DNA of 63,484 nt, the filler included, from Reticulomyxa filosa (lineage: Eukaryota > Protista > Foraminifera): assembly GCA_000512085.1 (NCBI GenBank). It is 19 parts of 19 records of this genome, joined end to end, with 100 filler letters (N's around TTAATTAATTAA, not from the genome) between each part and the next. Parts side by side here need not be neighbours in the genome. Positions count along the whole stretch, not along the records: positions 1 to 2,938 come from ASPP01001313.1; 18 more parts are not named here. One strand, given 5' to 3'. A program made the position numbers and the translations under genes. Below are positions 1 through 5,420 of this stretch, one piece after another; position 1 is the stretch's first letter, and every line of letters begins with the position of its first letter. Under the pieces are notes generated by a model. The model was not told the DNA's origin, did not search any database, and worked only from the letters and a program-made list of their open reading frames with translations.

Positions 1-1160
1 AACGAATTGTATTATCCCATGATCCAGAACATATCACATTTGAAATACCACTACTATTCTTTATTACAAATGGTGAATATTCAACAGACCATACAATACT
101 TGTATGTCCATTAAACAATTGAACTTGCTGACCAGATCGAATATCCCACAAACGAACACTTTTATCTGCAGATCCAGATAATATTGTGTTAAATAATTCA
201 TTGGATCCATATTTTACACTTCTCACAATACTTGTATGTCCTTTGAATACATTGAGTTGTTTGGTTGTTTCAATATCCCATATTCGAATGGTTTTATCAA
301 ATGATCCAGAACAAATTGTATATCCATTTCCACCAATCACACCAATATTATTCATTTTATCATTTTTATTTTATCATTTTTGTTATTGCTTTGTAATGGT
401 GAAATATCAACACACCAAACAGTATTTTCATGTCCATTAAAAACATGTAATGATTTTAATGTTTCAACATCCCATAAACGAATTGTTTTGTCAAATGACC
501 CAGAACATAAGTATCTACCACCATTAAATGATGAAAATTCAATACCACAAACACAATCAGTGTGTTCATTGAATATTTGTAATTGTTGATTATGTTTGAA
601 ATCCCAAAAACTAATGATTTTGTCACTTGTTGAAGAACAAATGACATGTTGACAATGATTATGATAATGATATGATGAAAATTTCACACAATACACATTC
701 TTTGAATATCCATTTAATGATTGAACTTTTTTGTTGTTATCAACATCCCATACACGAACTTTTTTATCATTTGATCCAGAACAAATGAATTGACAATCAT
801 CGAGTATTGAATAATCAATACTCCACACAATATTTGTATGTCCAGTAAATGTATTTATTAATTTGGATGATGAACGAAATGTTTCAAACATGAAGATAGT
901 AGGTGCCTATGTTAAATAATTATTTTGATTGATCAAATGAAAAAAAATAATGAACTAACATAATTGACAACGAGTTTATCGAAATCTTTGATCCATCCTA
1001 ATTTAATGTTTAATGTTCGAATCCAATAATGAATAATGATTTGGATCTCTTCTTCTTCTTTTGACTGTTTCAATCACGTGTTACAACGATAAGTAAAATA
1101 AAGAATAAAAACTTAAAGACAAGTTGAGCTCAACTTTGATTGATAAGTTTAAGTTCATTC
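1..1160 (-). pseudogene. WD40-repeat protein of the expanded family; frameshifted and truncated at the window edge
   Basis: Repeated GH...WD units ([50 protein letters not shown]). N-terminal exon reads EEEIQIIIHYWIRTLNIKLGWIKDFDKLVVNY. GT-AG intron at 907-959. A 14-bp tandem duplication near 355-382 shifts the frame, and the probable first exon contains a TGA. Confidence 0.85.
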
Positions 1161-1242
1161 TTGTAACTTTTTTTAGTTTTCTCTTGAGATAATTTTTGAT
1201 GAAAAACTGCTTGAACTTTTGTTGACAAAAGGAAAAACTGAA

Positions 1243-1470
1243 CTAAGAAACATTTTGAAATGGAAGATAACTGTTACAGTTTGTAAAATATTTGTGCATC
1301 ACAATAACCAGTAGCAATTTGATGTTTTTGAGTAGTTGGCCAAATGGCATATCTTTGTTTATATTTGTTTTTTTCATTGTTGTTTGATTAGAAGTTGTAT
1401 TATTTTCACCACGACAAGCATCAACAATAAATATTTTTGGAAAATCTTTGAAAGATTCCATTTCATAGAA
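1243..1470 (-). pseudogene. Caspase-like (peptidase C14) catalytic-Cys region, fragment
   Basis: YEMESFKDFPKIFIVDACRGEN matches the caspase PK(L/I)F(F/I)xQACRG strand-plus-Cys motif, with D in place of Q. No catalytic His segment is visible. Confidence 0.75.
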
Positions 1471-1499
1471 TACTTAAAAAAATTATCTTAAAAAAAATT

Positions 1500-1970
1500 C
1501 CAAATAATCATTTTCAAATAGTTCCACCATGTTATTACATTGATTATATTTATCAAATATTTCATCAAATCCGTCCATAATAAATATAAATGATATATTT
1601 TCACGAATTGCATCCATAATTTCTTTATTAATATATTTACCTGTTAATGCTTGTAAAATAATATCTCTTTCATTATTTTTATTATAAACTCTTGGAAAGG
1701 AAATGTAAACAGTAATTAGTAGTTTGGATCATTTTTATAATTATTCCATAGTGCTTCTTCCAAATGACGACAAAATATGCTTTTTCCTGATTTCCCTTGA
1801 ATTATCATCCCTTTTTTTTTATACAATGACTATTGTTCTTATTTTTCACTTGTTTTCTTCTTTTTCTTCCAAAAATGCAAGTACATGTTTATGACAATCA
1901 TATGTGTTTTCTTTTTGCTTTTCATTAGCTTTTACATCCTCATATGCATAATTATTTGCTTGTAAACCAA
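1500..1970 (-). pseudogene. Degenerate NACHT-like STAND NTPase fragment
   Basis: Manual translation gives MIIQGKSGKSIFCRHLEEALW (shortened Walker A), then ITVYISFPRVY, then SFIFIMDGFDEIFD (NACHT-type Walker B hhhhDGhDE). Stops and frameshifts lie between the blocks. Confidence 0.7.
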
Positions 1971-2151
1971 ATCTCTATCTAAAATAAGTGAGTTGTTTAG
2001 TACAAGGAAAATATTGTTGCATTAAAACAAGAGAGGGTACTCACTCAAGCAAATATGCAAATCAACAAGTTAACAAAAACTACAAATCCACTGAGTAAAT
2101 GTATTATTATTGAAAAGTATTATGTAATGGATATTTTGTGTTTAATTTAAC

Positions 2152-2880
2152 ATGACAAGGATGGAAAGAAATGACGAATCGGAAATAGTAAGAGAGCTGT
2201 CTATTTACGTGTTGTGGAAGATCTTAAACTATCCTAAAAAGACAAAATATCGCCAAATCAATAAGCAAGCCCTATATGACAACTTACTGCGTAGATGTTG
2301 TCAACGAAATGTCGATATAGATAAAGTAATGGCAAATATGGAGCGCCGTTTAGAGCAGTGTGGCTTTGGAATAAGAGCAGAAGATAGAAATTGGTATTAT
2401 CAAAAGGATATGCAGTTATTAGGACTGTGGAGCCAGTATTGCGAATGGATGGACATGCAGCATATGTATTCATTTTGTAGCTACTCTCTTTTTTTATCCA
2501 AATGGCAATACATATAAAAATAACAACAAGAGGATATATTATTATTATTATTTTGAAAATAGGCATGGAATGGAGGGCGTGTTAAAAACAGTAAGTATGC
2601 TGGGAAATAGAAAATGGAGTGAGTATTCAACTGTGTTTGATTATGAGCACCGAAGAATTGTGTTGTTTGAAAACGAAAAATTGAAAGTAACGACATTGCA
2701 AGTTGGCAATCGAAAAAATTTGTCATTGGAATTGAATGTTGATATTAAATACTATAATGATTTTTCTGATGTTAATACAAGTCAAGGCAAATGGGCTTGT
2801 CTTTATTCTCAATGATACGTGGCATTTTGGTATGACCGATAATATTACAAGAGATTGTTTTGCAAATTGTTGCTCCGTTA
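2152..2880 (+). CDS. Hypothetical protein with PUB-like N-terminal domain (spliced, 3' partial, possibly degenerate)
   Basis: LWKILNYPKKTKYRQIN resembles the PUB motif (NI..P...KYR.I). ORFs 2152-2517 and 2570-2815 are separated by an AT-rich intron-like gap ending aaatag at about 2562. Confidence 0.5.
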
Positions 2881-2938
2881 ATTAAAATCAAAAACACACA
2901 CACTCTTTTTTTTTTTTTTTGTTTTTAGGGAAGGGGGG

Positions 2939-3038
2939 NNNNNNNNNNNNNNNNNNNNNNNNNNNNNNNNNNNNNNNNNNNNTTAATTAATTAANNNNNN
3001 NNNNNNNNNNNNNNNNNNNNNNNNNNNNNNNNNNNNNN
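2939..3038. other. Artificial contig-joining linker (44 N + TTAATTAATTAA + 44 N), first of 18
   Basis: The same 100-bp spacer, with stops in all six frames, occurs at 2939, 5973, 8676, 9929, 11979, 17536, 18677, 34781, 36154, 40356, 41531, 43344, 45758, 47164, 50699, 54720, 60943 and 62043. Confidence 0.98.
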
Positions 3039-3363
3039 CAATAACAATAACAATAACAATAGCAATGACAATAGCAATGGCAATATGCTCAAGTTGAAGA
3101 GATCTTCTCTTCATCACTTGAACGATGTGTTCGATGTTACTACTACCACTACTACTACTACTACTACTAGTGCTACTGGTGCTACTGGTGCTTCGGCAGA
3201 CTCGTCTGATCCTCATTATTCTCCTTCTGATATTCTTCTCAATGCGCTCAATCATCATCACACTCTTTTCAACCAAATACGCATTCCCGCTTATGCCTAT
3301 TTGAGACCCAATCCTAACGATCCCACCTTGCGTACTCAGAACAGTACTCTTGCGTCGCAATAA
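3039..3363 (+). CDS. 3' fragment of a hypothetical protein with low-complexity tracts
   Basis: Open frame from the contig start to TAA at 3361-3363, with a poly-Thr tract, higher GC than the flanks and an AT-rich UTR-like region after it. Confidence 0.45.
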
Positions 3364-4246
3364 AATTTATACATTTATGTGTAAGGGAAAAAGAGAAAGA
3401 GAGGGGGAGGGGGGGGGGGAAAAAAAAAGGATAATTTGCAATACATCTTTTTTTGTTTCTTTTTTTTTGGTTTGGCCTGGTTTGTTGCTCGCTTTTTTTT
3501 TGTGATATAGTGTGTGTTTTTACCTTTCACAATGCAATCATACTTTCACGGACAACTAATATATCACAAATTAAATACTGCTGGGATCTTATTTTTCATA
3601 ACTTGGAGTTCATATAAATCATACATACATAAATAATATTTCCTCCTCTCTTTCTCTTCTTTCACACGCAAAACTTATAGACAAATCCAAACAACAGTCA
3701 AAATGCCTCGCTGACTATTGCATATTCTGCTTTTGATATGTTGCACTTAGTCTGTGTTAAAATGTTGACGAACTGAAGTATATTGGCCTTAATTATATCA
3801 GTTTGTCACAAAATGCTGCGAGTTAGCATTACAGCTTGTTTCTATTTTGTTTTTATTCTTTTTTACTTTATTTATCTGCTTTCTTTATTTTTATTTATAT
3901 TTTCTTCTCTTCTATTTTGGTTTTAATTCACATGTTGTAATGTTCAAATTAATCTAACTCATTTTTAGTTATTTTGCAGAGTCGATGACACCTGAAACAA
4001 AAATTTAGTATTTGGTTAACTAACAATCAACTTTAAAAATATTGCAAAACTTGTTTCTTATTAAAGCAATTTCAATACTTTATTTTTGCAACGTATGGCA
4101 TTGTATCACGTGAGAAAAAGGGTTTTGATACTTTACCAAGTCGGGGACTTTTGAGTGGAAAAGTTTTTCCTTATTTCATTATTGCTCTACTTGTTATTCT
4201 CTACCATTTTCTTTAGATAAGAAAACAAAGTAAAACTCGAGCAAAG

Positions 4247-4480
4247 ATGCCACATAGAACAGCCCAGGACTTAAAAAGACTGGAAGAAGAAAAGAAAGAA
4301 CTAGAAAACGAACTAAATATGCTTGATAATACCGACAAACCAGAAGAGGCAGCCAATGCGATAATCGAATACGTTGCAAAGAGTAAAGAACCCCTCTTGG
4401 AGCAGGAGAACCCCTACAGACCTGCGCCGGGATGTTGTCAAATGTTAAGTAAATGTTGTGACGTATCACTAACTACTTGA
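4247..4480 (+). CDS. Heterotrimeric G-protein gamma subunit (GGL domain)
   Basis: 77 aa. N-terminal coiled coil HRTAQDLKRLEEEKKELENEL, helix PEEAANAIIEYV, EPLL (DPLL-like) and ENPY (NPF-like) motifs, Cys pairs near the C-terminus. Confidence 0.85.
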   Translation: MPHRTAQDLKRLEEEKKELENELNMLDNTDKPEEAANAIIEYVAKSKEPLLEQENPYRPAPGCCQMLSKCCDVSLTT

Positions 4481-5420
4481 CAAATCCCTTTTTTTTTTGT
4501 AAAAAAAATTGATCCTAATAAAATTGTTTTAAATACGAGCAAAATTACACGTTTTTAAAAGGTAATGATGGATGTGTACATACAGACTGTGAAGACATCT
4601 TCAAATGGAAAATTCCGTGCATTCTTTCGAGACAAGGAAGAAGTGTAAGTATTTGTTAAAAATGAACCGTAATCACAGATTGCAAAAACAAGTGTTCAGA
4701 TAATTTTATTCACGTTTGATCAAAATTGTTTATTTCCTTCTTTTTTGTTTTTTTTTTTTTGTCTTGTTCATTATTTTTTGGATTGTGAACGGCGACCTTT
4801 TTTTTGTGTGTGTTGGGTATTTACCCTATTGTTAAACAAAAGCGTTGCAACGGTGTGAAGTACATGCCTTTTTTCTCTTGTTCCTTTTATGATCATTTTT
4901 GACATTGTTGGCGTAAAGGAGCTGTCCATTCATAACAACTCTTTGCTTTATTAAACTCTTCTCAATCGTAGCATAAACAATATTCATTCATTGCAATTGA
5001 TTGGGCTTCCTTTCAATAAGGTTATTGTAAAATTATTTTAAGTGTTTTGAGTGTCGTGTACAAAAAGTTAAAGAAATGAATTGACTAAAAAAATGTGAAT
5101 TTTTTGTTAGCACAACCCTAGGGTTTTGAAATTGTTTGGAACATTTAATGAAGGTAAATTTAAATACAAAATTTGTCGCCTTTAAGCCCGCTTTAAACAT
5201 GCGATACCAATCAGTACTCTTGGTTTTTTGCTTAAAAACAAGCCAAGAGAAAAGATACTCTCTACATGAACAAATATGCTTTGTTTCATAGCGTCAATAC
5301 TAACTCAACAATAATATAAATGAATTTCAATTAACGTTTAATTTTCTATTGTTTAAGTGCCTTTCCATGTGATAAGAAATTGCCAACCAAAAACAGTGGC
5401 AAAATATTTAATCAAACCAA

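What the first reader, a model, noticed from the sequence alone, without database searches (positions are those of the whole stretch)
1243..1970. NACHT-like NTPase joined to a caspase-type protease motif: trace of a possible NLR/apoptosome-like family in a protist
Seen: on the minus strand a Walker A remnant (QGKSGKSIF) and a NACHT-type Walker B (FIFIMDGFDE) run, within about 120 nt, into PKIFIVDACRGE. Established: STAND NTPases with repeat sensors activate caspases in animal apoptosomes and inflammasomes and in some bacterial defence systems. Protists usually have metacaspases (DxCHSG) rather than PKxFxxxACRG enzymes. Inference: this is an internally deleted copy of a single-chain NACHT-caspase receptor, and intact paralogs would form a self-contained immunity or cell-death module. 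This copy is non-functional, since it has stops and no catalytic His segment.
Basis: partly seen in the sequence, partly recalled or inferred. Interest (0 to 1): 0.8.

Follow-up and report, generated by a model that had tools for sequence, protein, structure and literature searches.

The report
Dead NACHT and caspase gene stumps
This stretch of the foraminifer Reticulomyxa filosa holds broken leftovers of two separate genes, a NACHT ATPase and a caspase-type protease, brought next to each other by deletion in front of a frameshifted WD40 gene, so it is a gene graveyard and not the relic of a fused immune receptor.

Summary
The organism is Reticulomyxa filosa. The protease stump (window 1466-1299) is an internal piece of the expanded, already published R. 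filosa caspase family. The NTPase stump (about 1965-1486) is an internal piece of a Pfam-verified NACHT gene family. It has a 6-nt deletion in the P-loop, in-frame stops and at least two frameshifts.

The fusion reading is not supported:
- Intact relatives of the two stumps are separate genes. On contig L008 they are neighbours on opposite strands.
- None of 54 caspase-family proteins found carries NACHT.
- In the paralogous locus L003 the same NACHT and caspase remnants lie about 2.5 kb apart, with a Tc1/mariner remnant between them. Both remnants extend past the window's breakpoints.
- Both domains are cut mid-domain at the window junction.

The WD40 gene downstream belongs to a large stand-alone family with its own start. 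Here a 14-bp tandem duplication shifts its frame.

Verdict: a decayed mosaic of low interest. One lead remains. Caspase genes in this genome often sit beside NACHT, Kelch or WD40 genes. Whole-genome scans and read mapping were not possible.

The parts
1486..1965 (-). Internal stump of a NACHT STAND-NTPase gene, from about 40 codons before the P-loop to shortly after Walker B. It lacks the N-terminal 430 or so residues and everything after Walker B. Weak similarity to the NACHT 'NEWNAKII' region persists to about 1486.
   Evidence: 69% nt identity over 445 nt to L008 719-304 (window 1965-1532). tblastn gives 68% over 62 aa and 63% over 30 aa. The L008 ORF is PF05729 NACHT, E=2.9e-8, 34.2 bits, above the cut-off of 26.7. 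Fading similarity beyond 1534 is seen.
1773..1799 (-). Walker A remnant QGKSGKSIF (frame 2). It is two residues short of the family P-loop GKSGAGKS because of a 6-nt deletion.
   Evidence: Protein alignment A2 and DNA alignment.
1561..1590 (-). NACHT-type Walker B FIFIMDGFDE (frame 1).
   Evidence: Aligns with FVFILDGFDE of the L008 NACHT gene and FVFIMDGFDE of the L003 remnant.
1719..1860 (-). Lesions in the NACHT stump. A TGA stop in frame 1 follows EEKEENK. TAA and TAG stops lie just upstream of the P-loop where the intact gene has sense codons, about a 24-nt replacement follows them, and there is a one-base frameshift near 1725.
   Evidence: Three-frame translation and alignment to L008.
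1467..1485 (-). Junction between the two stumps: AT-rich low-complexity DNA. Caspase homology starts sharply at 1466.
   Evidence: Window versus four caspase loci is 35-40% identical upstream of 1466 and 82-92% downstream, while those loci stay 73-84% alike upstream.
1299..1466 (-). Internal stump of a caspase-type Peptidase_C14 gene. It covers the Cys-motif region (equivalent to RFI_10549 residues about 290-346). A frameshift and small deletion follow NINKDMPF, and IWPTTQKHQIA continues in frame 0. There is no His segment, no N-terminal half and no C-terminal end.
   Evidence: phmmer hits P0121-P0124. P0124 has a full C14 domain, E=1.5e-20. tblastn results, blastn. Pfam C14 gives 17.8 bits at profile positions 113-136 of 233.
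1405..1440 (-). Catalytic-Cys motif PKIFIVDACRGE (Cys codon at 1416-1414).
   Evidence: Identical or nearly identical to PKIFI(I/V)DACRGE in the intact proteins RFI_10549 and RFI_06001.
1248..1292 (-). Spacer shared with the paralogous loci L001 and L003. The window lacks about 130-365 bp that those loci have here.
   Evidence: blastn to L001 825-861 (92%) and to the start of the L003 3933-4982 block.
1..1221 (-). WD40-repeat gene of a very large R. filosa family, running off the edge of the piece. It has its own start (ATG at 1158-1156, MNLNLSIK), the leader EEEIQIIIHYWIRTLNIKLGWIKDFDKLVVNY (1073-957), probable short introns, and then WD40 repeats (891-355 in frame 1, 370-2 in frame 0).
   Evidence: Pfam WD40 E=2.3e-26 and 2.3e-20. 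364 family hits, the top 120 all R. filosa. The leader occurs in 36 of the fetched proteins, many starting at a Met just upstream. 86% identity over 1077 nt to L003. Homology to L005 starts at 1221.
354..381 (.). Exact 14-bp tandem duplication that shifts the WD40 reading frame by +2.
   Evidence: Tandem Repeats Finder: period 14, 2.0 copies, 100% match. The window is +8, +11 and +2 nt relative to the paralogs L003, L005 and L004, i.e. +2 mod 3 in every case.
2152..2885 (+). 5' part of an unrelated gene on the opposite strand (ORFs 2152-2517, 2570-2815 and 2736-2885). It is homologous to genes that lie upstream of the intact caspase RFI_10549 on contig L002.
   Evidence: tblastx shows collinear matches of window 2158-2882 to L002 2352-3129 at 32-56% aa identity. 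No Pfam family.

Best explanation
The finding is a decayed mosaic, not the relic of a fused receptor. Reticulomyxa filosa has large families of caspase-type C14 proteases, NACHT NTPases and WD40 proteins. Their genes are separate but often lie side by side.

In the lineage of this locus and its paralogs L003 and L001, a caspase gene just upstream of a WD40 gene decayed to an internal stump, and a NACHT pseudogene lay further upstream. In the window, a further deletion of about 2.7 kb removed three things: the distal part of the NACHT remnant, the intervening DNA, and the caspase His region. That left the Walker B of one dead gene about 120 nt from the Cys motif of another. I infer no function for the NACHT-caspase part, and the WD40 gene is itself frameshifted.

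Shown here: the homology of each stump, the lesions, the breakpoints, the separate intact genes, and the wider spacing in L003. Inferred: the order of events and the single-deletion origin of the junction.
For: - Organism and families: all of the top 120 WD40 hits are R. filosa, and the contigs come from GCA_000512085.1.
- The caspase stump is homologous to P0121-P0124. P0124 (RFI_10549) is a 409-aa stand-alone protein with a full C14 domain, E=1.5e-20.
- Of 54 family hits, 36 have PF00656 on record and none has PF05729. Partner domains are Kelch or Ras.
- The NACHT stump matches L008:3-2024:-, which passes Pfam NACHT at 34.2 bits against a cut-off of 26.7. That gene lies on the strand opposite the caspase gene 500 bp away.
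- L003 has the NACHT remnant at 689-1040 (reaching the LWPFTK region) and Tc1/mariner remnants at 2369-2921 (HTH_Tnp_Tc3_2 E=7.6e-5, DDE_3 E=2.1e-6). Its caspase remnant starts at 3495 and includes a decayed His region IIIICEH-stop. The WD40 gene that follows is 86% identical to the window's.
- The caspase breakpoint at window 1466 is sharp.
- The lesions are a 6-nt P-loop deletion, in-frame stops, frameshifts and a 14-bp duplication in the WD40 gene.
- WD40 paralogs L004 and L005 have neither remnant upstream.
Against: - I could not scan the whole R. filosa assembly or transcriptome, so a true NACHT-caspase gene elsewhere is not excluded. The protein searches saw caspase relatives only up to 716 aa.
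- NACHT, caspase remnant and WD40 appear in the same order on the same strand in two independent contigs (the window and L003). A broken three-domain gene could also leave that pattern.
- The NACHT remnants of the window and L003 are only 76% identical, against 86-92% for the caspase and WD40 parts. The single-deletion history is therefore not proven.
- The junction was not checked against reads.
Confidence: 0.75

Rival explanations
1. One reading: the window is an internally deleted copy of a single-chain NACHT-caspase (-WD40) receptor, and intact paralogs of that architecture exist in the genome.
For: The order NACHT, then caspase, then WD40 on one strand is seen in both the window and L003. 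R. filosa shuffles these domains freely: there are Kelch+C14 and C14+Ras gene models. NACHT genes are immediate neighbours of caspase genes on 2 of 6 long caspase contigs.
Against: - No NACHT among 54 caspase-family proteins or among the hits of the exhaustive representative search.
- The intact relatives are separate genes, on opposite strands in L008.
- Both domains are cut mid-domain at the junction, and L003 shows 2.5 kb with a transposon remnant between them.
- The intact NACHT relative has its own long N-terminal region, and intact caspases have their own 180-230-aa N-terminal region. Neither region is present in the window.
- The WD40 gene has its own Met and leader in many paralogs.
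Confidence: 0.08
2. Assembly chimera: the two stumps come from different loci and were joined by the assembler through AT-rich low-complexity sequence in this highly repetitive, fragmented genome.
For: The junction (1467-1533) is AT-rich and low in complexity, with T runs. The assembly consists of short contigs, many under 2 kb. The tight junction is unique to this contig.
Against: An independent contig, L003, has the same order and orientation of the three elements. Weak NACHT similarity continues into the junction, as expected for a real deletion scar.
Confidence: 0.08
3. Exonised remnant: the caspase stump (ORF 1461-1243, starting MESFKDF) is now the first coding exon of the WD40 gene, as in the public gene model P0177 for locus L003.
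For: P0177, a predicted 351-aa protein, joins the L003 caspase remnant to the leader and WD40 repeats. The window stump begins with an ATG.
Against: P0177 is an ab initio model without transcript evidence seen here. The window's WD40 gene is frameshifted. Other family members start at a Met just before the leader. A 30-residue piece without His cannot be a protease.
Confidence: 0.05

Closest known systems
Reticulomyxa filosa caspase-like proteins (Peptidase_C14; e.g. RFI_10549, RFI_06001; described by Klim et al. 2018, PMC5982838)
   Same: The window stump shares the motif FNCHEMESFKDFPKIFI(V/I)DACRGE and is 82-92% identical in DNA over the Cys region.
   Different: The intact genes encode 300-500-aa stand-alone proteins: an N-terminal region of about 180-230 aa plus a full C14 domain with a CGHG His motif. 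The window keeps only about 60 codons, has a frameshift, and lacks the His region.
NACHT-domain STAND NTPases (PF05729), here the R. filosa gene L008:3-3181 (minus strand)
   Same: Same region from before the P-loop to Walker B, the same hhhhDGFDE Walker B, and about 67 residues between Walker A and Walker B.
   Different: The window copy is cut at both ends, has a shortened P-loop, stops and frameshifts, and scores nothing against the Pfam model by itself.
Animal apoptosome and inflammasomes (Apaf-1/caspase-9, NLR/caspase-1), and the bacterial and fungal caspase-like-protease-STAND-repeat fusion proteins (my own knowledge of the literature, e.g. Koonin and Aravind 2002)
   Same: The same three kinds of module occur together: a STAND NTPase, a C14 protease and WD40 repeats. 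In R. filosa their genes are often neighbours.
   Different: No single-chain fusion and no shared adaptor domain was found. The caspase N-terminal region does not recur in the neighbouring NACHT genes. The order in the window (half a NACHT, then half a caspase) fits no functional architecture. No functional link was tested.
Mosaic pseudogenes in clusters of fast-evolving multigene families such as NLR clusters (general knowledge)
   Same: Truncated pieces of several family members, indels, a transposon remnant in the sister locus, and paralogous copies that differ by deletions.
   Different: Nothing notable. This is the category the window fits.

Membership tests
NACHT NTPase (PF05729) | Significant match to the family profile | tested here: not met
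   The window pieces give no hit at E up to 10 in Pfam, PADLOC, NCBIfam or PDB sequences. Family membership rests on homology to L008:3-2024:-, which does pass (34.2 bits against 26.7).
NACHT NTPase (PF05729) | Homology to a verified NACHT gene | tested here: met
   69% nt identity over 445 nt, and 68% aa over 62 residues, to the L008 NACHT gene.
NACHT NTPase (PF05729) | Canonical Walker A GxxxxGK[ST] | tested here: not met
   The window has GKS--GKS where the intact relative has GKSGAGKS, a 6-nt deletion.
NACHT NTPase (PF05729) | Walker B hhhhDGhDE | tested here: met
   FIFIMDGFDE at 1590-1561.
NACHT NTPase (PF05729) | Complete domain in an open frame | tested here: not met
   The fragment is truncated shortly after Walker B and about 40 codons before the P-loop, with stops and at least two frameshifts.
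Caspase-type Peptidase_C14 (PF00656) | Catalytic Cys in a QACxG-like motif | tested here: met
   DACRG within PKIFIVDACRGE, as in the intact R. filosa caspases.
Caspase-type Peptidase_C14 (PF00656) | Catalytic His segment (SHG/GHG) | tested here: not met
   Caspase homology starts at 1466, downstream of where the His region would be. Relatives have IIIICGHG.
Caspase-type Peptidase_C14 (PF00656) | Profile match above the curated cut-off | tested here: not met
   17.8 bits against 21.4, covering profile positions 113-136 of 233 only. Homology to family members is nevertheless clear.
Single-chain STAND-caspase receptor | Both domains complete in one reading frame in this locus | tested here: not met
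   Both are internal stumps separated by stops.
Single-chain STAND-caspase receptor | An intact paralog with both domains exists in the genome | tested here: inconclusive
   None was found among 54 caspase-family proteins of 225-716 aa, 5 representative hits or 6 long caspase contigs. The whole assembly could not be scanned.
WD40 repeat (PF00400) | Repeated WD40 units matching the profile | tested here: met
   E=2.3e-26 (4 stretches) and E=2.3e-20 (3 stretches).

The most novel reading that the evidence does not exclude
The window itself is junk, but it points to a real pattern. In R. filosa, caspase-type protease genes may be non-randomly linked to NACHT STAND-NTPase genes and to WD40 or Kelch repeat genes, forming a multi-gene (split) apoptosome-like or immune module in a rhizarian protist. 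Two of six long caspase contigs have a NACHT gene as the immediate neighbour, three have Kelch directly upstream, and two have a collinear large WD40 gene directly downstream. The background density of these expanded families is unknown, so chance adjacency is not excluded.
Probability: 0.2. Interest if true: 0.6.

Novelty: new member of a known kind. Interest (0 to 1): 0.2.

Why it matters
As found, it matters little. It is one more decayed copy in a genome full of expanded, fragmented gene families, and caspase-type proteases in R. filosa are already published. Its value is as a caution: two famous motifs 120 nt apart can be a deletion scar rather than a domain fusion.

The side observation could matter. 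If the caspase, NACHT and repeat-protein genes of this foraminifer are truly clustered and act together, that would be a protist counterpart of STAND-controlled caspase activation outside animals, fungi and bacteria. It would bear on how old that partnership is.

Tried and rejected

Searches that returned nothing useful:
- The word search with the 81-aa NACHT piece was blank. It saw only proteins of 45-142 aa, so this says nothing about longer relatives.
- The Atlas feature search was blank.
- The NACHT pieces and a 3-row profile against Pfam, PADLOC, NCBIfam and PDB gave no meaningful hits. The NACHT call became solid only after contig L008 turned up an intact relative.

Ideas considered and rejected:
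- A ciliate genetic code (TAA/TAG read as Gln). The organism is R. filosa, one stop is TGA, and frameshifts are needed in any case.
- My first idea that the caspase stump ends in a microhomology deletion to the C-terminal PFKQMLQDI region. tblastn and L001 show that it continues in another frame as IWPTTQKHQIA.
- A shared adaptor domain between caspase N-termini and neighbouring NACHT genes. None was found.
- My guess that the L008 WD40 gene has a TRAF-type zinc finger, and that the L002 upstream gene is an ADP-ribosyltransferase. Pfam supports neither.

The R. filosa genome paper is not in the paper library.

Full report
**What is in the sequence.** The piece is AT-rich (28.7% G+C). Reading the minus strand gives, in order:
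- QGKSGKSIF at 1799-1773 (frame 2);
- a one-base frameshift near 1725;
- FIFIMDGFDE at 1590-1561 (frame 1);
- stops at about 1485 and 1476;
- PKIFIVDACRGE at 1440-1405 (frame 1);
- about 350 nt without a long ORF;
- WD40 repeats from 891 to the edge of the piece.

**Organism.** The WD40 ORF (355-891) finds 364 proteins. The top 120 are all Reticulomyxa filosa WD40 proteins, at up to 83% identity. Every contig fetched later belongs to assembly GCA_000512085.1. The organism is therefore a foraminifer with a very fragmented, paralog-rich assembly.

**The protease stump is real but only a stump.** By itself the 76-aa piece scores 17.8 bits against Peptidase_C14, below the cut-off of 21.4, and covers profile positions 113-136 of 233. 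An exhaustive phmmer search of 1.84 billion representatives returned four true hits, all from R. filosa (E=5.6e-13 to 8.6e-05).

One hit, P0124 (RFI_10549, 409 aa), has a full C14 domain (E=1.5e-20) with IIIICGHG and PKIFIIDACRGE. A word search with P0124 found 54 relatives. Of these, 36 have PF00656 on record, some have Kelch or Ras as a partner domain, and none has NACHT.

Caspase-type proteins in Reticulomyxa were published in 2018 (PMC5982838; also PMC10565124). The premise that a caspase-type enzyme is unexpected in this protist therefore no longer holds.

A DNA alignment of the window with four caspase loci shows 82-92% identity downstream of window 1466 and 35-40% upstream. Those four loci remain 73-84% alike upstream. 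That is a sharp breakpoint in the middle of the domain.

After NINKDMPF the homology continues in another frame (IWPTTQKHQIA) and ends near 1299. Only about 60 codons of a 230-residue domain survive.

**The NTPase stump is a NACHT remnant.** The two window pieces give nothing in Pfam, PADLOC, NCBIfam or PDB searches, and the word search was blank because of its length window.

The identity became clear from contig L008, fetched for the caspase RFI_06001. Its minus strand carries a 674-aa open frame running off the contig (L008:3-2024). This frame matches the window at 69% over 445 nt (window 1965-1532), and at 68% over 62 aa and 63% over 30 aa. That frame passes Pfam NACHT (E=2.9e-8, 34.2 bits against 26.7; profile positions 2-163 of 167).

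Against this intact relative the window copy shows these defects:
- a 6-nt deletion in the P-loop (GKSGAGKS reduced to GKSGKS);
- TAA and TAG stops just upstream of the P-loop, where the intact gene has sense codons;
- a TGA stop;
- at least two frameshifts.

The copy is also cut about 40 codons before the P-loop and shortly after Walker B.

**Were the two ever one gene?** Four lines of evidence argue against it.
1. The intact relatives are separate genes. On L008 the NACHT gene (108-3181) is on the strand opposite the caspase gene (3678-5228), with about 500 bp between their starts. On L009 a caspase gene is convergent with a 1795-aa NACHT-HEAT gene. RFI_10549 on L002 has no NACHT nearby.
2. 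No caspase-family protein found carries NACHT.
3. The paralogous contig L003 shares the caspase stump (88%) and the WD40 gene (86% over 1077 nt) with the window. There the NACHT remnant (689-1040) runs on past the window's breakpoint to the LWPFTK region. The caspase remnant starts earlier (3495) and includes a decayed His region, IIIICEH-stop. About 2.5 kb lies between them, including Tc1/mariner remnants (HTH_Tnp_Tc3_2 E=7.6e-5; DDE_3 E=2.1e-6). The window looks like the same arrangement after a further deletion of about 2.7 kb. Faint NACHT similarity persists in the 67 nt before the junction.
4. The order 'N-terminal half of NACHT, then C-terminal half of caspase' fits no working protein. 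The intact NACHT relative and the intact caspases each have a long N-terminal region of their own, and both regions are absent from the window.

**The WD40 part.** It belongs to a very large stand-alone family. Thirty-six of the fetched relatives carry the leader EEEIQIIIHHWIRTLNIKLGWIKDFDKLVVNY, often right after a Met such as MNLNLSIK. The window has the same elements: an ATG at 1158 and the leader at 1073-957.

Paralogs L004 and L005 have neither a NACHT nor a caspase remnant upstream, and homology to L005 starts at window 1221. An exact 14-bp tandem duplication (354-381) puts the window at +2 mod 3 relative to three in-frame paralogs. This gene is therefore broken too, unless the duplication is an assembly error.

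**Caveats.**
- I could not scan the whole genome, look at reads or see transcripts.
- The NACHT remnants of the window and L003 are only 76% identical, against 86-92% for the rest. The exact history is an inference.
- The AT-rich junction leaves a small chance of misassembly.

**A lead worth noting.** Across six long caspase contigs, totalling about 71 kb:
- two have a NACHT gene as the immediate neighbour (L008, L009);
- three have a Kelch gene directly upstream (L002, L009, L012);
- two have a collinear large WD40 gene directly downstream (L008, L011).

The L008 WD40 propeller is of the same subfamily as the window's. The caspase-then-WD40 adjacency in the window is thus probably inherited. 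Whether the NACHT adjacency exceeds chance in a genome packed with these families is untested. No paper in the library mentions Reticulomyxa together with NACHT.

**Verdict.** The domain assignments and the 'dead copy' conclusion are right. The single-chain receptor is not supported. This is an ordinary mosaic of pseudogene stumps from known families, and it is of low interest.

Noticed in passing
L008:3-2024 (minus strand): The intact NACHT relative has a 470-residue N-terminal region with a weak RelA_SpoT-like match (PF04607, E=3.3e-4, 21.4 bits, below the cut-off of 27; residues 172-259). It also has a faint PDB hit to the (p)ppApp synthetase toxin Tas1 (E=0.71). This may be a nucleotide-pyrophosphokinase-like effector on a protist NACHT protein. 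tblastn finds a similar stretch at the start of a WD40 gene model on L010, near 11438 (E=1e-8). That stretch reads through stops in the frame I tried.
   Followed up: partly
L008, L009, L011, L002, L012, L010 (R. filosa caspase contigs): Recurrent gene neighbourhoods around caspase genes. NACHT is adjacent on L008 (divergent) and L009 (convergent, a NACHT-HEAT gene of 1795 aa). Kelch lies directly upstream on L002, L009 and L012. A large WD40 gene lies directly downstream on L008 and L011, and these two loci are collinear. Public gene models also fuse Kelch+C14 (P0132, P0157) and C14+Ras (P0127).
   Followed up: partly
L003:2369-2921: A Tc1/mariner-type transposase remnant (HTH_Tnp_Tc3_2 E=7.6e-5; DDE_3 E=2.1e-6) lies between the NACHT and caspase remnants of the sister locus. 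A small inverted WD40 fragment sits at L003 1600-1630.
   Followed up: yes
window 2152-2885 (+ strand): ORFs of 121, 81 and 49 aa form the 5' part of a gene with no Pfam family. The gene is collinear with genes that lie upstream of the intact caspase RFI_10549 on L002 (32-56% aa identity). The downstream 444-aa ORF of the L002 gene looked ADP-ribosyltransferase-like to me by eye, but it has no Pfam support.
   Followed up: partly
window 354-381: An exact 14-bp tandem duplication in the Asn/Asp/Lys-rich loop of the WD40 gene causes a frameshift. The same loop varies in length among paralogs.
   Followed up: yes
L003:3567-4963 (protein P0177): A public gene model splices the dead caspase stump onto the WD40 gene and is named a G-protein beta WD-40 protein. 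It is probably an annotation artefact. P0121 (L001) is likewise a gene model built on a decayed caspase stump.
   Followed up: partly
L008:6617-7285 (+ strand): The 815-aa WD40 gene downstream of the caspase RFI_06001 starts with a Cys/His-rich region followed by Lys/Glu-rich stretches that look coiled-coil-like by eye. Pfam finds no domain there.
   Followed up: partly
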